Of a stretch of DNA of 64,000 nt, positions 11,991 to 64,000 are shown one piece after another. Each line of letters starts with the position of its first letter. The first letter of the stretch is position 1. Position numbers and translations under genes: made by a program. The notes under the pieces were generated by a model. That model ran no database searches. It was not told where the DNA came from and worked only from the letters and a program-made list of their open reading frames with translations. The DNA is taken from positions 124,001 through 188,000 of IMG/VR virus record IMGVR_UViG_3300026484_000087; one strand, written 5' to 3'.

Positions 11991-12026
11991 AAGTATATAG
12001 TATAGCGAGAGCTATACTATATACTT
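11991..12026. terminator. hairpin between convergent genes
   Basis: AAGTATATAGTATAGC-GAGA-GCTATACTATATACTT. Confidence 0.7.
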
Positions 12027-14742: not shown

Positions 14743-15408
14743 CGTTGCCTTCACATAGGTCGTTACTCTATGCAGTTCTCTTATGAACTTCCCCAGCTTC
14801 CACTGGGAGACGAGACTATATCATGTTCTTCTGACACCATATCAGTAAGAACCAAACCACTTCGATTTAAGCACTAGGTACGTGCACCCACTTGGGCCCT
14901 ACTCCCCGCTACAGGATAGTCGTTGAACATTACCCATATTATATATATATATATAGTAACTTAGGGTCTTAGCTGCTAAAGGGAACCTTAGGTTCCACGG
15001 TTGCCTATTATACTATTATAGTGCTGATATTTATAAACGTTTAGTTGGTTACTCTAAACTGAAATATCGAGGCTATATTAATATTGATCACTTAAGATCA
15101 TCCATACAAGATACATTATTATATCCCAGTAGTTTTGCAACTACTCTTGTTAAACCGTCATAGACTAGTTTCCTGTCTATTGTGGTGGTACAGCTTTAAG
15201 GTTTTCCAGCAATTCAATTTGTTATTCGACATGCTTCTCAGCATGAAGGATCAATTTATTTTTTAACTTAAATTTAACAACATCTTTTGGCCTTTTCTAT
15301 AAAGGCGTTAGTTTTTGTTGTTTTTATTTTAAATCCTATTAGTTTATATGTATAATTAATATATGTTTACTATCTATTTCATCCTAATAGTACCAGTAAA
15401 AAAAAATT
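14743..15408 (-). mobile_element. group I self-splicing intron (IA2-like), 666 nt, no intact ORF
   Basis: Exon ends in U and intron ends in G; P AATTGCTGGAAA (~15203-15214), Q TAGCAGCTAAG, R GTTCAACGACTA (14917-14928), S TGATATAGTC (14814-14823); P1 has a U-G pair at the splice site; P8 and P9 hairpins present. Confidence 0.93.
15274..15327 (-). pseudogene. probable relic of a homing-endonuclease gene in the intron P1 loop
   Basis: AGGA RBS, then ATA in place of ATG, then KTTKTNAFIEKAKRCC*. Confidence 0.4.
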
Positions 15409-16858
15409 AATCTGCTCCTAATCTATCCAGTTTTGAAAAATGGGGACTTAAGGAATTGAAATATGCCTCCGTTAATATAGGATACTCATATACTTTATCT
15501 TCTTCCTCCCAATCAAAACCAAGGATACTAACTGTTCTGGCTTTAACTGTCGTTTTAAGATAAGGTATGCTTGGATATATACCACCTAAACCAGCAACGG
15601 GGTATCTAGTTAAGAAACCAGGATATTTTTTAACATCTTTATATATTGCTAGATATATAAGCTCAGCATATGTTATTGGTCTAAGGTATCTTTTATCTAC
15701 ATCGTCTGGTATATCTAAAGTATTCTTTATAAGTTTTACTTTTTTACCATCATCATAGATAAGGGCAAGATAATAACCCTCAACTTCTATAGGTTCAGAT
15801 CTAAGTTCATCTTGTGCTAATTTATTTATAACACTATTAAGACCTTCATCAGATGTCCACATATCCTTAGTTTTTGGTTTTATATCAACGTTAACAGTTG
15901 TTAAGGTTTTCTTATCAACTAATCTGGCAGTATTGCTATGGATATCAAATACGTCACCAAGTATCTTTAAATTTAATTGGTACTTAGTTATAGGGTTAAT
16001 AGCCTTAGAATATTGGTATAAACCTATAACGGTATTATTAAAAGATATTCTATTCTCACTGTTAGTTAAATCATGTATTACCGATGGTATTGGCGTAATT
16101 ACATTTCTAGTAGAATCTCTTATTGCCCTTTTAGTCCATTTGTTCTGTATGAACTTTTTCTTTCCATCCATCAAAGATATAAAATGATCATATATTTCAG
16201 TTATGATAGTTTGTATTCTAAATCTTATAGGATCTAATATCGTAGCATCATTAGATGATGTAGATATATTCTCAAGAGCATTTGTTGTAGTTAGTAGCTT
16301 TCTATAGATAGCGTTAACTTCATCTTCACTTGGTTTACCTGCATCATCTACTATATAATCTCTCAAACCAGCTGGAAGTACTAAAAATCTATCTATTAAA
16401 ATATCTTGACTTTTATATTTCTTAATAAGTTTAATTTTAAATTCCCTAGCATCACTATTTCTAGTTTCTAATTTAAGTTTATCATATTTAGACATAAAGA
16501 ATTCAAAACCTGTTTCACCGTCATTAGCATTTGAGAGAACAAAATCAGAACTTTTACTATCCCACTTGGCAAAAGCTTTGCCTGACATAATGTCTGAGTA
16601 TAGTTTTTTTAAGCTAGCTATATGTTTATATATTAAAGGGTGTAATACTTTTATATGTAAATTTACATAACCGAATCTTTTATTTCTTTCTTCACTTCCA
16701 ACTCTACCAAATATTTCAGTAGAGAATAATCCATCTGGATTGAAGTTTTTACTAGATGATTCGAAGATGCTAAGATCTTTAACTTCACCTATCATTTTTA
16801 TTTGGTCTCTATTAAGTATTAATAAATCTATATTAAAAGGTTCCATTTTTTCTAACAT
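15409..16858 (-). CDS. virion RNAP beta'-like subunit (phiKZ gp180-like), exon 1; spliced product 538 aa
   Basis: PDGLFSTEIFG, VLPAGLRD, TRNVIT and TRYPV motifs; ORF stops at RLGAD inside the catalytic motif. Confidence 0.93.
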
Positions 16859-25871: not shown

Positions 25872-25906
25872 CATATAGTACATAGGTTAAACCTATGTAC
25901 TATATG
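25872..25906. terminator. hairpin between convergent genes
   Basis: CATATAGTACATAGGT-TAA-ACCTATGTACTATATG. Confidence 0.7.
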
Positions 25907-30703: not shown

Positions 30704-31020
30704 TTAAATATGTACTAATGGCAGTCATAGCGTTCATGTTTAGTGGTTGTTTTAGATGTCAACCAGTTATAGAAACAAAGGTAGTTTATAAAGATAAAGT
30801 TATTCTTGTAGCTCCTCCGAAAGAAGTACTTAACGATATCAGTATCCCAAGACCACCAGATAGGGAGTTATTTATTCAGTCTAGTTCCATAGATAGATTA
30901 AATATGCTTACCAATTATAGCATAGATTTGATGAAAAGACTTAACTCGTCTAATAATAGATTCAGAAGTCTTAGAGAATGGGTTGATAAACAAAAGAAAA
31001 TATATAAGGAAGATAAGTAG
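30700..31020 (+). CDS. putative o-spanin lipoprotein (Rz1-like)
   Basis: Signal peptide with lipobox FSG-C; Pro-rich; ATGA overlap with the upstream gene. Confidence 0.7.
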   Translation: MIKYVLMAVIAFMFSGCFRCQPVIETKVVYKDKVILVAPPKEVLNDISIPRPPDRELFIQSSSIDRLNMLTNYSIDLMKRLNSSNNRFRSLREWVDKQKKIYKEDK

Positions 31021-31044
31021 TTAGAGGCAATACCTCTAACTACT
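31017..31044. terminator. hairpin between convergent genes
   Basis: GTAGTTAGAGG-CAATA-CCTCTAACTAC. Confidence 0.65.
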
Positions 31045-31856
31045 TATTTGTATGCCTCTAATCTGCTCTTTATTCTGGCATATGCTATTTTGGTATCGTT
31101 GTTTGGATCTGATGTAGTGCCATTAGGTGTTATATAAACCGATTCGTCCAAAACTTTTAATAGATCGGTTAATACCGACAATAGGTTTTCTGTACCATTA
31201 TTGATGTTAAAATGTGAAGCGTTCAGTGTTACTGAGTTGCTTGCTGTCATTGTAAGATCACTAGCTTCTAAATTAAATGACTTAGTTTTCAACTTTATAT
31301 CGTTATTAAATACCATACTAAGTAATTCAGCAGCACTGTCAAACCCAATTTTATTACCTTTATCATCAAATATTTCAAATAGACCTACTTTAGTATCTAT
31401 TTTCATATCCCATGTAGTTTCTTCTCCATCATTCTTGGCAGTATGTAAGCTTACCAACTTTTCAATATTGTCAAATAGCATACTATATGAATTATCATTG
31501 GTTAATTCTTTTGCTTCATCGTCATTACTAAATCTAAAATAATGAGTACCTTTTGTATGTATCGCAGATTTATCTAATGTGCTAAATACAAAGAACCAAT
31601 AATAAACACCAGTATCTCGATGTCTAAATATAATTACCTCTTTACCAGCATTTAACGGTGGTACCTCATCATGAATATTCTCTAATAAACCCAGCCATGT
31701 AGCGTTTAGATTTTGTGGCGGTGCTTCATCTGCAGGAAAGAATATCTTTATGTCTTCGTTGTCTATTCTAATACATTTTACCGTATCGTTTCCAACAGAA
31801 GTATCTTCAGTAAGTCTGTATAATCCTATAGTCTTTAATCTAGTTAACGGTTTCAT
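31044..31856 (-). CDS. baseplate spike-like protein, paralogue without HxH tip
   Basis: Aligns by eye with 31866-32735 (A.WL, V..FR, ND.E.TT.D..I.TK.G, D.KGN). Confidence 0.6.
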   Translation of the reverse strand: MKPLTRLKTIGLYRLTEDTSVGNDTVKCIRIDNEDIKIFFPADEAPPQNLNATWLGLLENIHDEVPPLNAGKEVIIFRHRDTGVYYWFFVFSTLDKSAIHTKGTHYFRFSNDDEAKELTNDNSYSMLFDNIEKLVSLHTAKNDGEETTWDMKIDTKVGLFEIFDDKGNKIGFDSAAELLSMVFNNDIKLKTKSFNLEASDLTMTASNSVTLNASHFNINNGTENLLSVLTDLLKVLDESVYITPNGTTSDPNNDTKIAYARIKSRLEAYK

Positions 31857-37735: not shown

Positions 37736-38117
37736 TGTCTTCTCCTATTTCCTTAATATAGTCTTTGAATCTATTTAGCTCATTAAGACTCATATTACAT
37801 TCGAACTCTTCAGTCCATTCTAATGTACAAAGCTCAGCGATGCTTTTACCAGCATCTTTATAATCCTGAACAGTTCCAGGACTAACTTGATCTTTTAATA
37901 CATCAACCACTATTTTGTTATTATCATTGTATTCAACAACAACTCTAACTGTTCCTACGTATATAAGATCTACTTCTCTTTTATTGTCTTGTCTTATTCT
38001 ACTAGCGAAAGCCATACTATCTTTTGGATAGTTTCCTCTATTGTCAAAGTTTCTTGTTAGAGGACTAACCCCAGTAGTAGTAAAATTATTAGAAAAGTTT
38101 TGTGGATTAAATGACAT
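37719..38117 (-). CDS. hypothetical protein
   Basis: 132-aa ORF, AAGGAG RBS. Confidence 0.7.
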   Translation of the reverse strand: MSFNPQNFSNNFTTTGVSPLTRNFDNRGNYPKDSMAFASRIRQDNKREVDLIYVGTVRVVVEYNDNNKIVVDVLKDQVSPGTVQDYKDAGKSIAELCTLEWTEEFECNMSLNELNRFKDYIKEIGEDNEKTN

Positions 38118-38221
38118 AATGTCTCCTTCCGTAATAGACCATTGATTATAGGTTCTAACTTTTGTTAGATTATTTTAAATTACCCATAATAAAAGAATCA
38201 TTAGCTATTTGATTCTTCCCC

Positions 38222-38263
38222 TATTACTACTTTTATTATATATGGTTGAAATATATTCGAAAC
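38222..38263 (-). promoter_or_regulatory. putative early promoter
   Basis: TTTCAACCATATATAATA core shared with copies at ~34211 and ~41746. Confidence 0.55.
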
Positions 38264-41050: not shown

Positions 41051-41262
41051 AATACCTCATTAGCTTTTACAATACACTCGATATTATTTCTAATATCAGT
41101 TGCTTGTATTGGTTCATCTTCATAGTTGAATACTATTTCACCAATATTAAAACCCATACCGTTAAAATGCGTGCTAGCCATTCTAGCATGATCAGTTAAT
41201 AGCGTTAATGTTTCTAGATTAAACACTGTATCTTCTTCCACGTCCATTCTGATATTATACAT
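41047..41262 (-). CDS. hypothetical protein
   Basis: 71 aa; translationally coupled to the upstream gene. Confidence 0.6.
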   Translation of the reverse strand: MYNIRMDVEEDTVFNLETLTLLTDHARMASTHFNGMGFNIGEIVFNYEDEPIQATDIRNNIECIVKANEVL

Positions 41263-41444
41263 TATCTTTCCTCCACTTTAACTATAATGTTACTGCATTC
41301 GGTATTTGACCATATTGTAACTGAACCATTCTTTACTTCCCAACAATGACCTGTTCTTGTTTTACTTAAAGGCATTATTTCATATGCCCAACCATTACAA
41401 ACCTCTACCATTTTCTCACATCCGTCTACTGTTATAACTTGCAT
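41262..41444 (-). CDS. hypothetical protein
   Basis: 60 aa; AAGGA RBS. Confidence 0.6.
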   Translation of the reverse strand: MQVITVDGCEKMVEVCNGWAYEIMPLSKTRTGHCWEVKNGSVTIWSNTECSNIIVKVEER

Positions 41445-41477
41445 TTTAGTTCCTTATTTATTTTTTAATAATTACCA

Positions 41478-41567
41478 TTAATTGATATAGGAAATTATTT
41501 CTTTTAGAATATCTTTTAATAAAGATATCAACACAGTTCTTAAAAGAGATATTAAAAACTTTCTCAT
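41478..41567 (-). CDS. 29-aa amphipathic peptide MRKFLISLLRTVLISLLKDILKEIISYIN
   Basis: AGGA RBS 6 nt before ATG; not in the ORF track. Confidence 0.45.
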   Translation of the reverse strand: MRKFLISLLRTVLISLLKDILKEIISYIN

Positions 41568-41587
41568 GTGGATTCCTAGTCAAATTT

Positions 41588-41740
41588 TACAGTATGGTAC
41601 CGTCAGTACCATACTGTAGTCATTTGTTTATTTCTAGTTAATCCATCGAACTAAATCGATCCACCATATTAAATGGTCCATTCACTAACGATACGTATAC
41701 CGTAAATGATGGTTCACAGTAATTACAACTGCAAACTCTA
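41588..41740 (-). ncRNA. candidate small RNA (~150 nt)
   Basis: Bounded by the promoter motif and a 13-bp-stem hairpin; four internal hairpins; no credible ORF. Confidence 0.5.
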
Positions 41741-41774
41741 ATTATATTATATATGGTTGAAAAAAAATGGAAAC
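41734..41774 (-). promoter_or_regulatory. putative early promoter
   Basis: TTTCAACCATATATAATATAATTAG. Confidence 0.55.
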
Positions 41775-41775
41775 T

Positions 41776-41804
41776 CAACTTAGAGCATTTAATGCTCTAA
41801 GTTG
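41776..41804. terminator. hairpin after the 41810-42475 gene
   Basis: CAACTTAGAGCATT-T-AATGCTCTAAGTTG. Confidence 0.6.
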
Positions 41805-41809
41805 TTAAA

Positions 41810-42475
41810 TTACCTTTTTTTCTCTGTACCAGATAACAAAGCCACAGAATTAAATTTAAAATCCAATAAAAGTTTATCTTGTCTATGGTAGTAGTATTCT
41901 GTTTTCTTAACAGCTAATATGTTACTTTCACGACTAAAATGATCTTCATTGAAATCTACACCTAGATACTCTGCTCGATTTTTCTCAACTTCCATGTTTA
42001 AGAAATATATTTTTCTATAGATTTCGTACCTAGTCAATTTTGGTTGTTTATAGTAGATGCTGTTTGATTTAGATCTGGTCCATATAATATCCATTTCATT
42101 GTTGGTTTTTATACTTGGGTAGATATCTACGAACCTTTCAGCCAATTTACCAAAATTATCTAAATGAATCTCTGGCATATCTATATAGAATCTACAGTTA
42201 TTCTCTAGAATAAAACTATTTATTATCTTAACTATGTCATCTTTTGATCTGGCTTCAAGCACAGTATAATTTACATTTTTAAGCTTACCAAATGTTCTTA
42301 TATCATCAGCTTTGGCACATGCTTGCTTTATGGCTTCTGCTGTTTCCTCACATGTTATGAAGATGGAGTTATAACTTGTACCACTGGTTTGTTCTGTTAT
42401 AAATAACCTAATAAGCTCGGTTGTTTTACCGCTTCTTGCTTTACCTACTATACATTTTATTTTATTCTTTTCCAT
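41810..42475 (-). CDS. small P-loop NTPase-like protein
   Basis: GKARSGKT Walker A, IFITCEE, FYID. Confidence 0.6.
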   Translation of the reverse strand: MEKNKIKCIVGKARSGKTTELIRLFITEQTSGTSYNSIFITCEETAEAIKQACAKADDIRTFGKLKNVNYTVLEARSKDDIVKIINSFILENNCRFYIDMPEIHLDNFGKLAERFVDIYPSIKTNNEMDIIWTRSKSNSIYYKQPKLTRYEIYRKIYFLNMEVEKNRAEYLGVDFNEDHFSRESNILAVKKTEYYYHRQDKLLLDFKFNSVALLSGTEKKR

Positions 42476-43564: not shown

Positions 43565-43596
43565 TAACTACTTAGGACATATGTCCTAAGTAGTTA
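43565..43596. terminator. perfect 32-bp palindrome
   Basis: TAACTACTTAGGACAT|ATGTCCTAAGTAGTTA. Confidence 0.6.
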
Positions 43597-45075
43597 CATC
43601 TTAACGATTTTTATAAGGTTATTAACCATGCCTATTTGATGGTTTATTAAACTATAATTAGTCATTGCTATAGATATCAAACTAGCATTATTATCTAGAC
43701 CAGTAGATAATGCATGTAATGTAGATTTAGTTATTTCAAACTTATTATCTTTACTAACAATATGTTCATGTAGCATATTAGTTTTTTCAGCTATCTCTTT
43801 AACTAAGCTATCTATTTTACTAAAATTAACCTTACCAAGTTTATTTCCTAGAATGGCAGTATCTTCAGCAAGCTTAGGCAATGAAGTTAAATTTGGTACA
43901 AGTTTACCAACTGGCATTCTATCGTTGTTAGAGTTAACATCTATAACCCCAGATAGATTATTTTTTATCTCATAAGCAACTTCTTCGGTTTTTTCAAAAA
44001 GTGTTTTCTTAGGTTTAAAAGATTTTCTGTAATCTTCATCAGACATTATCTTACTTAAGATGACATTTAACTCACTAAGAGAATCTATAATTAAAGAACC
44101 TAACATATGTTCATTTTTACTAAGTTTATTTTCAAGTTCTATTAGGTTAGTGTTTAAACCAATAACGACTGGGGTTTCTCTAGATTCTATACTAGCATAA
44201 CTTTTATTCTTAATAATTCTCTTAAGAGAACTAATATCACTTCTAAGTTGTCTAAGTTCTTTATTGCTTTCACCAGATATACCACTTATGGTTTCTGTAA
44301 CACCAGAGAATAATTCGCTAATAGAATTTAATCTATTTAAAACAAAGTTATTTATATTACTAATTAAACCATTTTCATTACTAAGCATATTAACCGCTTC
44401 ATCTACTGATTCAAAACTAAGAGTTTCTTCTAACGTTACTAACTGATTAACTTTTTCCATATTCTTTTTCCTTTTATCCCATACATCTTGTATGTTCTGT
44501 GATTGACTACCCCATTTAAGATTGGTAGCATTACAATTCTCTTTATTATCGTCCTTATGCATAACGACAAAACCTTTTGGACCAACTCCATGAAATGCAG
44601 TACAAACCAATATATGTACATACTCCATTTTACTTTTGGTGCTACCATCTTTAAAAATAGATACTTTAAGATAGTGTCCAGCACTAACACCTTTAGTAAA
44701 ATTACCTGTTTTCAATGTAAGTATTTCTCCAAGGTTACTCGCCAGATACTTACTAAATCCAGGTATAGGTTTCCATATTCTATCCATAGCATTTAATGGG
44801 ACAGGTATCCTATTTGATACATCTACATTAACTGGCAACTCAATTGGTATTATGTTTTTATGTATATAAGGAGCTTCCTCATCTACATATAGGCCATCAT
44901 CTGATAGACTAAATACTTTATAGTACCATCCATCAAGTTTTCTATGTTTTTTCTTAATAGCTTTAACAAGGTCTTTTAATGTCTTATACATTTTTATATA
45001 ACCAGTGCTATTTACCTTAATTTCTATTTTTTTATTAAGTATATCTGTTTTATAAATTGGTAAATATAATACCAC
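43594..45075 (-). CDS. NUMOD4/HNH endonuclease fused to a putative virion head protein; internal start at 44460
   Basis: WKPIPGFSKYLASNLG (NUMOD4) and VHILV..AF, VMHKDDNKENCNATNLKW (HNH); helical C-terminal part with SFE/SNE sites and its own AAGGA RBS. Confidence 0.8.
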   Translation of the reverse strand: MVLYLPIYKTDILNKKIEIKVNSTGYIKMYKTLKDLVKAIKKKHRKLDGWYYKVFSLSDDGLYVDEEAPYIHKNIIPIELPVNVDVSNRIPVPLNAMDRIWKPIPGFSKYLASNLGEILTLKTGNFTKGVSAGHYLKVSIFKDGSTKSKMEYVHILVCTAFHGVGPKGFVVMHKDDNKENCNATNLKWGSQSQNIQDVWDKRKKNMEKVNQLVTLEETLSFESVDEAVNMLSNENGLISNINNFVLNRLNSISELFSGVTETISGISGESNKELRQLRSDISSLKRIIKNKSYASIESRETPVVIGLNTNLIELENKLSKNEHMLGSLIIDSLSELNVILSKIMSDEDYRKSFKPKKTLFEKTEEVAYEIKNNLSGVIDVNSNNDRMPVGKLVPNLTSLPKLAEDTAILGNKLGKVNFSKIDSLVKEIAEKTNMLHEHIVSKDNKFEITKSTLHALSTGLDNNASLISIAMTNYSLINHQIGMVNNLIKIVKM

Positions 45076-54881: not shown

Positions 54882-54915
54882 TACTATAGATGATGGAAAT
54901 CCATCATCTATAGTA
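54882..54915. terminator. hairpin between convergent genes
   Basis: TACTATAGATGATGG-AAAT-CCATCATCTATAGTA. Confidence 0.7.
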
Positions 54916-63897: not shown

Positions 63898-63930
63898 TAT
63901 ATACTATATAGCATAACGCTATATAGTATA
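63898..63930. terminator. hairpin after the portal gene
   Basis: TATACTATATAGC-ATAAC-GCTATATAGTATA. Confidence 0.6.
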
Positions 63931-64000
63931 TGTATTTAAATTTGCTCTATAGTATAGCTGTTAGTTAATTTAGATTTAATTAATCTAAATATATCACCTT

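What the first reader, a model, noticed from the sequence alone, without database searches (positions are those of the whole stretch)
41588..41774. Self-contained small RNA with its own promoter, hairpin chain and GGA linkers
Seen on the minus strand: the promoter motif is followed by hairpins TTGCAGT/ACTGTGA, CATTTACGGTA/TATCGTTAGTG, ACCAT/ATGGT and ATCGA/TCGAT. The last three are each followed by TGGA, and the unit ends in a 13-bp stem. The wobble pairs favour the minus strand. Established: CsrA/RsmA binds GGA, usually in loops rather than linkers. Inference: an early phage sRNA (protein sponge or decoy), or an attenuating leader.
Basis: partly seen in the sequence, partly recalled or inferred. 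Interest (0 to 1): 0.65.

Follow-up and report, generated by a model that had tools for sequence, protein, structure and literature searches.

The report
Structured early-operon leader in jumbo phage
A real chain of RNA hairpins follows an early promoter of an uncultured giant phage, but it is most likely the folded front end of the messenger for a few tiny early genes, not a free-standing CsrA-type sponge RNA.

Summary
On the minus strand a recurrent promoter (41774-41746) is followed by four small hairpins, three TGGA motifs and a 13/14-bp stem. The chain folds well only on that strand.

The window is a 206-kb phiKZ/AR9-type jumbo phage. The promoter matches the AR9 early (virion RNA polymerase) consensus, giving a predicted start at 41739/41738.

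The "self-contained sRNA / CsrA sponge" reading is not supported:
- No GGA lies in a loop, and there is no Rfam hit.
- There is no U-tract after the big stem.
- No other promoter serves the conserved downstream ORFs (60, 71 and 83 aa).
- The big stem extends (p≈0.009) into a lower helix that pairs with the ribosome-binding site of a 29-codon ORF (ATG 41567).
- All sister promoters in this genome carry 40-111-nt structured leaders.

Relatives show a modular region:
- One ~95% identical lineage keeps the chain, with changes in loops or wobble-compatible.
- One assembly lacks hairpins 2-4 (57 nt).
- A more distant phage keeps promoter and hairpin 1 and runs straight into the 60-aa ORF homologue.

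Best reading: a structured early 5' leader, possibly with partial premature termination, as documented in phiKZ. This is a new member of a known kind, of modest interest.

The parts
41776..41804 (-). Hairpin (13-14 bp) ending the upstream early unit (134-, 197- and 221-aa ORFs). It forms the 'stem-loop + promoter' cassette with the next item.
   Evidence: The same position is occupied by a different hairpin in L021.
41746..41774 (-). Early-type promoter: GTTTCCA, then N8, then TTCAACC-ATATATAAT. The core ATATATAAT lies at 41754-41746.
   Evidence: Recurs in the window, the contig and a relative. Matches the AR9 early consensus AAATATATATTAT-(6N)-G+1 (PMC5312081).
41738..41739 (-). Predicted transcription start (A 41739 or G 41738), 6-7 nt after the core element.
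   Evidence: Inference from AR9/phiKZ spacing. The conserved TAG sits at the same distance in all copies.
41712..41736 (-). H1, a 5'-proximal 9-bp hairpin. It is conserved in all three lineages.
   Evidence: Three pairs change on one side and stay paired through G.U; one pair is broken in L021.
41679..41711 (-). H2, a bipartite hairpin (13 pairs, UACG loop). Its last GG is the GG of the first TGGA.
41663..41677 (-). H3, a 5-bp hairpin (ACCAU/AUGGU). L056 has a 1-nt insertion in its loop.
41645..41660 (-). H4, a 5-bp hairpin (AUCGA/UCGAU). L056 has two substitutions in its loop.
41568..41644 (-). Extended H5. The upper 14-bp stem is 41618-41588. The lower helices are CAAAU/AUUUG, CUAG/CUAG and GGAUU/AAUCC. 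The 3' arm (41585-41570) covers the SD-like AGGAA (41577-41573) next to ATG 41567.
   Evidence: The flanks add -9.8 kcal/mol against -3.9 +/- 2.2 for shuffled flanks, p = 0.009.
41478..41567 (-). Candidate 29-codon ORF (MRKFLISLL...), with SD AGGAA 6 nt upstream. Its coding status is unresolved.
   Evidence: An internal 24-nt duplication carries synonymous Leu differences. Codon usage is atypical and the amphipathicity is not significant. No homologue was found.
41646..41702 (-). Segment (most of H2, plus H3 and H4, with two of the three TGGA) that is missing in assembly L057. Contig L058 starts exactly at its right edge.
41490..41711 (-). An indel of about 220 nt relative to the related phage (L021/L055). 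It holds H2-H5 and most of the 29-codon ORF. In the relative, promoter + H1 lead directly (about 55 nt) to the homologue of the 60-aa ORF.
41262..41444 (-). 60-aa ORF, conserved in all three lineages. It is the first well-supported gene served by this promoter, and the 71- and 83-aa ORFs follow down to the hairpin at 40800-40770.

Best explanation
The region is the structured 5' leader of an early operon of a phiKZ/AR9-type jumbo phage. It is not an independent sRNA gene.

Proposed mechanism (inferred, except where a call is cited under evidence):
- Transcription starts at about 41739/41738 from an early (virion-RNA-polymerase-type) promoter that sits directly behind the previous unit's hairpin.
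- The RNA begins with a 5'-proximal hairpin (H1). This is a feature of all early transcripts of this phage and probably a stabiliser.
- Next comes a dispensable spacer module of three small hairpins (H2-H4).
- Last comes a long irregular hairpin (extended H5). Its base occludes the ribosome-binding site of a 29-codon ORF and so gates translation and/or processing.
- The polymerase must read through H5 to express the 60-, 71- and 83-aa ORFs.
- H5 resembles this phage's gene-end hairpins. A fraction of transcripts may therefore stop or be cut there and leave a short RNA of about 150-170 nt. That would be a by-product or attenuation product, as seen for 5'UTR-resident terminators in phiKZ.
For: Phage type and promoter:
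- The phage has a split beta' subunit about 40% identical to phiKZ-like phages.
- The promoter matches the AR9 early consensus, and a second motif, AACA-N6-TG, matches the AR9 late consensus.

Sister promoters and dependence of downstream genes:
- Every sister early promoter is followed by a 40-111-nt hairpin-containing leader and then SD+ATG.
- Sister leaders show compensatory pairs: 5 of 33 for the 38.2-kb leader.
- No other promoter motif lies between 41738 and 40800.
- In L021 the same promoter + H1 directly drive the orthologous ORFs.

H5:
- It has no U-tract on the minus strand.
- It is extended by a lower stem that needs downstream sequence and covers the SD.

Structure and conservation:
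- Structure is strand-specific.
- Between the window and L056, 6 of 9 variable columns fall in the 30% of columns that are unpaired. The 3 in stems all keep pairing through G.U. My arithmetic gives a binomial p of about 0.025, times at most 0.125.
- A loop indel frameshifts the small ORFs in H2-H4, so that part is noncoding.

Precedent:
- AR9 has 5'UTRs of 26-491 nt with conserved motifs.
- phiKZ has northern-validated short RNAs made by premature termination in 5'UTRs (PMC10914365).
Against: - No transcript data exist. The start site and the read-through are inferred.
- H5 has the size and style of this genome's gene-end hairpins, several of which also lack clean U-tracts. Efficient termination giving a discrete RNA cannot be excluded.
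- At 172 nt (294 nt to the 60-aa ORF) this is the longest leader of its class here.
- The 29-codon ORF whose SD is masked has poor codon usage and may not be a gene.
- Comparative depth is only three lineages. There are no double-sided compensatory changes in this RNA itself.
- H2-H5 are absent from a relative, so they are not essential for expressing the downstream genes.
Confidence: 0.58

Rival explanations
1. A self-contained early sRNA. Transcription from the early promoter stops at H5, or the RNA is cut there, and releases a stable RNA of about 150 nt that acts in trans, for example as a decoy or sponge for a host RNA-binding protein such as CsrA.
For: - Promoter, hairpin chain and a hairpin of the same class as gene-end hairpins lie within 150 nt, with no ORF between them.
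- The region after H5 is not significantly structured, z = -0.8.
- phiKZ makes such short species from 5'UTRs.
- TGGA occurs three times at 17-18-nt spacing.
Against: - There is no U-tract after H5.
- Downstream conserved ORFs have no other promoter.
- The lower H5 stem needs downstream sequence.
- The GGAs are not in loops and are partly paired.
- Loop sequences vary between close relatives while stems are kept, so there is no conserved seed.
- H2-H4, with two of the three GGAs, are deleted in a natural variant, and the whole module is absent in L021.
- No Rfam hit was found.
Confidence: 0.17
2. A recombination scar with no function of its own. Cassette shuffling at the conserved 'hairpin + early promoter' modules left an orphaned gene-end hairpin (H5) and decayed remains (H2-H4) in front of the small ORFs.
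For: - The neighbourhood is a mosaic. The upstream gene differs in all three lineages (221-aa ATPase; plus a 155-aa ORF; a 102-aa ORF) and identity is patchy.
- H2-H5 are present or absent between relatives, and H2-H4 are polymorphic.
- H5 looks like other gene-end hairpins.
Against: - Substitutions between the window and L056 avoid stems or keep pairing.
- The lower H5 stem is better than chance.
- H1-H4 fold significantly on one strand only.
Confidence: 0.15
3. A type I toxin-antitoxin-like module. The 29-aa peptide would be a membrane-active product whose mRNA is kept untranslated by the H5 structure. A plus-strand antisense RNA would start near 41517 and end at the H5 hairpin, covering the SD and start codon.
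For: - The ORF is small and Leu/Ile-rich, with an SD.
- The SD is sequestered.
- The plus strand has TTGATA-17-TAGAAT at 41482-41510.
- H5 has a T-rich tail only on the plus strand.
- H5 and the ORF travel together in the indel.
Against: - The sigma-70-like match is at background frequency: 38 found against 31.6 expected.
- It is not one of the phage's own promoter classes.
- The peptide has no clean transmembrane stretch, its amphipathicity is not significant and its codon usage is poor.
- No homologues were found.
- Wobble-compatible changes favour the minus strand.
Confidence: 0.05

Closest known systems
5'UTR-resident premature-termination RNAs of phiKZ and other virulent Pseudomonas phages (Putzeys et al. 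2024, PMC10914365)
   Same: - A jumbo phage with its own multisubunit RNA polymerases.
- A terminator-type hairpin less than 250 nt after a start site and ahead of the first gene.
- Expected dual output: a short RNA plus read-through mRNA.
- Conservation only among close relatives.
- Function unknown.
   Different: - No sequence similarity.
- No transcript data here.
- H5 lacks the phiKZ terminator motif and tail, and has an added SD-occluding lower stem.
AR9 early (virion RNAP) promoters and long 5'UTRs (Lavysh et al. 2017, PMC5312081)
   Same: - The core ATATATWAT with a purine start 6-7 nt downstream.
- A late-type AACA-N6-T(A/G) motif in the same genome.
- 5'UTRs of tens to hundreds of nt carrying conserved motifs.
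   Different: - This phage has extra conserved upstream blocks (GTTTCCA, TTCAACC).
- It is only about 40% identical in beta' to cultured relatives.
- Promoter activity is untested.
CsrB/RsmY/RsmZ protein-sponge sRNAs
   Same: Several GGA motifs close to small hairpins in a noncoding RNA of about 150 nt.
   Different: - The GGAs sit at stem ends or in 2-nt linkers, not in loops.
- There are only three.
- There is no terminator and no Rfam match.
- The GGA-bearing module is dispensable in a natural variant.
T4-type PeSL cassettes (promoter-early + stem-loop; Arbiol et al. 2010, recalled from memory, not checked here)
   Same: Repeated 'stem-loop + early promoter' modules flank small ORFs of unknown function in a mosaic, recombining region.
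   Different: - A different phage lineage and promoter type.
- Here the modules also carry conserved structured leaders.
Structured toxin-mRNA leaders of type I TA systems (tisB, zorO, hok; recalled from memory)
   Same: A long folded 5'UTR that hides the SD of a peptide ORF of about 30 codons.
   Different: There is no convincing antisense gene, the peptide is not clearly hydrophobic, and the setting is a virulent-type jumbo phage.

Membership tests
CsrA/RsmA sponge sRNA (CsrB/RsmZ type) | Multiple GGA motifs exposed in hairpin loops | tested here: not met
   In the MFE, centroid and consensus folds, none of the three GGAs is in a loop. The GG of the first is paired in H2, the A of the second in H4, and the third pairs with AAUCC.
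CsrA/RsmA sponge sRNA (CsrB/RsmZ type) | Match to a curated CsrB/CsrC/RsmX/Y/Z model | tested here: not met
   No Rfam hit at the gathering threshold in the window, and none among E<=10 hits in 41400-41850.
CsrA/RsmA sponge sRNA (CsrB/RsmZ type) | Host encodes CsrA and the RNA binds it | not testable with these tools
   The host is unknown: an uncultured metagenomic phage with no match in genome contigs.
Rho-independent terminator (for H5 on the minus strand) | Stable stem directly followed by a U-tract | tested here: not met
   The stem is present (13-14 bp) but its 3' flank is AAAAUUUG. The scan calls it a terminator only on the plus strand.
AR9/phiKZ-type early (virion RNAP) promoter | Extended conserved AT-rich element with a purine start about 6 nt downstream | tested here: met
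   ATATATAAT-N6-A/G at 41754-41738, against AAATATATATTAT-(6N)-G+1 in AR9.
AR9/phiKZ-type early (virion RNAP) promoter | Recurrent, correctly oriented upstream of genes, in a phage that encodes split multisubunit RNAPs | tested here: met
   Six intergenic minus-strand copies in the window, each upstream of a minus-strand gene. There are six 16-mer copies in the contig. A beta' fragment is present.
AR9/phiKZ-type early (virion RNAP) promoter | Early, protein-synthesis-independent transcription from this site | not testable with these tools
   Needs infection RNA-seq or primer extension.
5'UTR-derived short RNA by premature termination (phiKZ type) | Terminator-type hairpin between the start site and the first gene, less than 250 nt from the start | tested here: met
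   H5 ends about 150 nt after the predicted start. It has the same size and style as the gene-end hairpins of this genome.
5'UTR-derived short RNA by premature termination (phiKZ type) | Coexisting short and read-through transcripts | not testable with these tools
   Read-through is inferred only from the lack of another promoter and from the L021 arrangement.
Type I toxin-antitoxin | Small hydrophobic toxin ORF | tested here: inconclusive
   A 29-aa Leu/Ile-rich ORF with an SD. The hydrophobic run is interrupted by Arg/Thr, the helical moment is at the 77th percentile of shuffles, and codon usage is atypical.
Type I toxin-antitoxin | Antisense RNA gene with its own promoter and terminator | tested here: inconclusive
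   Only a 10/12 sigma-70-like match, at background frequency, and a T-rich tail after H5 on the plus strand. No phage-class promoter lies on the plus strand.
Ribosome-dependent leader-peptide attenuator (trp type) | Conserved short leader ORF with regulatory codons | tested here: not met
   A 15-codon ORF with three Trp codons overlaps the TGGA motifs. It has no SD and is frameshifted by the 1-nt loop indel in L056.

The most novel reading that the evidence does not exclude
H1-H5 is released early in infection as a discrete, stable RNA of about 150-170 nt, either by hairpin-dependent termination of the virion RNA polymerase or by RNase III-type cleavage in the extended H5. It then acts in trans on a host factor as a decoy for an RNA-binding protein or nuclease. 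H2-H4 would be a variable 'bait' module that is gained and lost between closely related phages. More broadly, the portable 'early promoter + structured leader' cassettes of this phage group, conserved with compensatory changes in front of unrelated genes, would be functional RNAs in their own right.
Probability: 0.1. Interest if true: 0.6.

Novelty: new member of a known kind. Interest (0 to 1): 0.3.

Why it matters
If the reading is right, the locus is one more example that jumbo phages with their own RNA polymerases put long, folded and evolutionarily modular leaders in front of early genes. That layer of control is known from AR9 and phiKZ transcriptomes, but no mechanism has been worked out.

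This locus offers a natural allelic series that would make the function of such leaders directly testable with reporter fusions:
- the full chain;
- the chain minus H2-H4;
- promoter + H1 only.

It does not open a new class of RNA.

Tried and rejected
Searches that found nothing useful:
- Rfam at the gathering threshold on the whole window, and at E<=10 on 41400-41850, gave only noise. ARAGORN found nothing.
- blastn of 1.5 kb against the phage collection found nothing. The 29-aa peptide by tblastn found nothing. Promoter + H1 by blastn gave only AT-rich noise.
- The 221-aa ATPase has no homologue besides itself.
- Searches with the 198-aa and 60-aa neighbours in viral, metagenome and genome collections and in the 5.8-billion-protein set found only three lineages.
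- A degenerate H3-H4 pattern in genome contigs found nothing. A 24-mer in viral contigs found only itself. The H1-type motif scan found only this contig plus noise.

Ideas rejected:
- Tandem-repeat or type III antitoxin (ToxI-like) array: TRF finds no array, and the units are not sequence repeats.
- Trp-type leader peptide: frameshifted in L056.
- The 46-aa TTG ORF at 41638-41778: it starts upstream of the predicted start site, is frameshifted in L056 and has a low coding score.
- MITE: only a single copy in all sequence held, and no terminal inverted repeats.
- CRISPR repeat, retron or tRNA-like: no support.

Uninformative:
- Conservation of the 29-codon ORF between the window and L056, because the whole stretch is 95-100% identical within a mosaic.

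Full report
**1. What is there**

On the minus strand, the 365-nt gap between a 221-aa P-loop ORF (41810..42475) and a 60-aa ORF (41262..41444) contains the following, in order:
- a 13-14-bp hairpin (41804-41776);
- a T-run and a promoter block (41774-41746);
- hairpins H1 (41736-41712), H2 (41711-41679), H3 (41677-41663) and H4 (41660-41645);
- an A-rich linker;
- a 14-pair hairpin, H5 (41618-41588).

TGGA follows H2, H3 and H4. The 187-nt span folds with z = -3.7. Without H5, H1-H4 still give z = -2.3 on the minus strand but -0.1 on the plus strand. Three TGGA within 60 nt is seen in 0.4% of minus-strand windows.

**2. Context: which phage and which promoter**

The window is part of IMGVR_UViG_3300026484_000087, a 206-kb contig of about 29% GC. 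It encodes a split RNA polymerase beta' fragment about 40% identical to those of phiKZ-like, Bacillus and Staphylococcus jumbo phages.

The promoter block recurs. The 16-mer TTCAACCATATATAAT has three copies in the window and six in the contig, and a related contig from the same sample also carries it.

Its core, ATATATWAT followed 6-7 nt later by A/G within a conserved TAG, matches the experimentally defined AR9 early (virion RNAP) consensus AAATATATATTAT-(6N)-G+1. A second recurrent motif, CCCATAACA-N6-TG (40084, 37418 and 32769, minus strand), matches the AR9 late consensus AACA-(6N)-T(A/G) (PMC5312081). Calling this an early promoter with a start at 41739/41738 is well grounded by analogy but is not shown experimentally.

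**3. This promoter class always carries a structured leader**

Each sister early promoter (51364, 43547, 38243, 34220 and 14536 in the window; L006 and L010 elsewhere in the contig) is followed by a hairpin that begins a few nucleotides after the predicted start. A leader of 40-111 nt then runs to SD+ATG.

The 38.2-kb leader is conserved in the related phage with 5 double-sided compensatory pairs out of 33. The first ORFs behind it are nevertheless unrelated (BLASTP E = 2.3). AR9 likewise has 5'UTRs of 26-491 nt with conserved motifs. A hairpin chain right after this promoter is therefore the rule here, not an exception. This one is only the longest: 172 nt to the first ATG with an SD, and 294 nt to the 60-aa ORF.

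**4. Is it self-contained?**

Four observations argue against:
- H5 has no U-tract on the minus strand (the flank is AAAAUUUG). The pattern scan calls it a terminator only on the plus strand.
- No promoter motif of any of the phage's classes lies between 41738 and the next gene-end hairpin at 40800-40770. The 60-, 71- and 83-aa ORFs therefore depend on this promoter.
- In the related phage (L021/L055) the same hairpin-promoter-H1 block leads after about 55 nt straight into the homologue of the 60-aa ORF.
- H5 is extended by three lower helices (CAAAU/AUUUG, CUAG/CUAG, GGAUU/AAUCC). Their 3' arms lie downstream of H5 and cover an SD-like AGGAA (41577-41573), 6 nt before ATG 41567. With H5 held fixed, the real flanks add -9.8 kcal/mol against -3.9 +/- 2.2 for shuffled flanks, p = 0.009. 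A structure that needs read-through to form is hard to reconcile with efficient termination.

Three observations argue in favour:
- H5 has the size and style of this genome's gene-end hairpins.
- It is the only one of them that sits in a 5'UTR.
- Several bona fide gene-end hairpins also lack clean U-tracts.

In phiKZ, 5'UTR-resident terminators produce abundant northern-validated short RNAs (71 and 141 nt) alongside read-through transcripts (PMC10914365). Partial termination or cleavage at H5 that leaves a species of about 150-170 nt therefore remains plausible. I put it near 40%.

**5. Coding or not**

The small ORFs inside H2-H4 are not coding. These are a 15-codon ORF with three Trp codons and a 46-aa TTG ORF. 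A 1-nt insertion in the H3 loop of the close relative L056 frameshifts both.

The 29-codon ORF behind H5 (41567-41478) remains open:
- For: it has an SD, and an internal 24-nt duplication whose Leu codons differ synonymously.
- Against: its codon usage is in the lowest percentile of real-gene chunks, its helical moment is unremarkable, and it has no homologue.

**6. Comparative evidence**

Exhaustive searches found only three lineages.

L056 (an ENA assembly, about 95% identical here) keeps the whole chain. Of 9 variable columns in the 171-nt RNA:
- 6 lie in the 30% of columns that are unpaired: the H1 loop, an H3 loop indel, two H4 loop positions and two internal-loop positions;
- the 3 in stems all keep pairing through G.U, which would be C.A mismatches on the other strand.

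By my arithmetic that is a binomial p of about 0.025, times at most 0.125. There are no double-sided compensatory changes, so the support for selection on structure is modest.

H1 is kept in all three lineages, with three wobble-type one-sided changes and one broken pair.

L057, a Logan assembly of SRR7968103, lacks 57 nt (window 41702-41646). That removes most of H2 together with H3, H4 and two of the three TGGA. The JGI contig L058 begins exactly at the right breakpoint. This suggests a population indel or an assembly branch.

L021 lacks about 220 nt (41711-41490), which is H2-H5 and most of the 29-codon ORF.

The region is therefore modular:
- H1 is universal.
- Extended H5 travels with the 29-codon ORF.
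- H2-H4 are dispensable.

**7. The CsrA idea**

The GGAs are not in loops. The GG of the first closes H2, the A of the second opens H4, and the third (GGAUU) pairs with AAUCC next to the SD. They arise largely from CCAU/AUGG stems. There are only three, two of them are lost in the natural deletion, and no Csr/Rsm model matches. The host is unknown. A CsrA-regulated leader, with GGA sites plus the SD, cannot be excluded, but nothing specific supports it.

**8. Verdict**

The best explanation (about 0.58) is a structured early 5' leader whose extended H5 gates the downstream small ORF(s) and may act as a partial attenuator.

Rivals:
- a discrete trans-acting early sRNA (about 0.17);
- a functionless recombination scar in a mosaic cassette region (about 0.15);
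- a type I TA-like module (about 0.05; one search gives only a background-level antisense promoter).

This is a new member of a known kind, the long structured 5'UTRs and 5'UTR-derived RNAs of AR9/phiKZ-type phages. Its main value is the natural allelic series it offers for experiments.

Noticed in passing
window 14791-15274 (-): A sub-threshold match to the group I intron model (RF00028, 34 bits against a gathering score of 50, E = 1e-6). It lies in a GC-rich stretch of the 925-nt ORF-free gap just downstream of the RNA polymerase beta' fragment gene (15407..16858).
   Followed up: partly
window 38112-38232 (-) and L021 1243-1363 (-): The leader behind the sister early promoter is conserved between the two phages as a three-way-junction fold, with 5 double-sided compensatory pairs of 33. 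The first ORFs behind it are unrelated (BLASTP E = 2.3). This looks like a portable promoter + leader cassette, or an RNA with a function of its own.
   Followed up: partly
window 51355-51335, 43538-43518, 34211-34190, 14527-14507 (-); also L006: Four or five early transcripts start with almost the same sequence, AGAUAC-N-UGGCAGUAUC (a 5-bp hairpin at +1). It is conserved in sequence, not only in structure, so it may be a protein or nuclease recognition site at early mRNA 5' ends.
   Followed up: partly
window 40084, 37418, 32769 (-): A second promoter class, TTACCCATAACA-N6-TG, lies directly behind gene-end hairpins and 15-25 nt before start codons. It matches the AR9 late consensus AACA-(6N)-T(A/G). 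Its reverse complement TTATGGGTAA also occurs upstream of genes (40743, 38188, 14938).
   Followed up: partly
whole window, e.g. 761-798, 11991-12026, 25872-25906, 31013-31047, 54882-54915, 63899-63931: Nearly every gene end carries a perfect 13-17-bp AT-rich hairpin, many between convergent genes and many without a clean U-tract. This suggests hairpin-driven termination by the phage polymerases.
   Followed up: partly
L057 80-95, L058 1, L056 798-856: Three assemblies of what appears to be one population differ by a 57/58-nt deletion of hairpins 2-4. One contig ends exactly at the breakpoint. This is either a real polymorphism or an assembly-graph branch.
   Followed up: partly
window 41810-42475 (-) versus L056 1-695 and L021 4318-4626: The gene upstream of the cassette differs in each lineage. 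The window has a 221-aa P-loop ATPase with no homologue in 5.8 billion proteins. L056 has the ATPase plus an extra 155-aa ORF. L021 has a 102-aa ORF. Nucleotide identity to L056 is a mosaic of 80% to 100%.
   Followed up: partly
window 43594-45075 (-): A 493-aa ORF with NUMOD4 and HNH_3 domains, a homing-endonuclease type, lies one transcription unit upstream.
   Followed up: no
window 41516-41563 (+ coordinates): A 24-nt tandem duplication inside the 29-codon ORF gives the peptide repeat KFLISLLR/TVLISLLK. The Leu codon differences are synonymous.
   Followed up: partly
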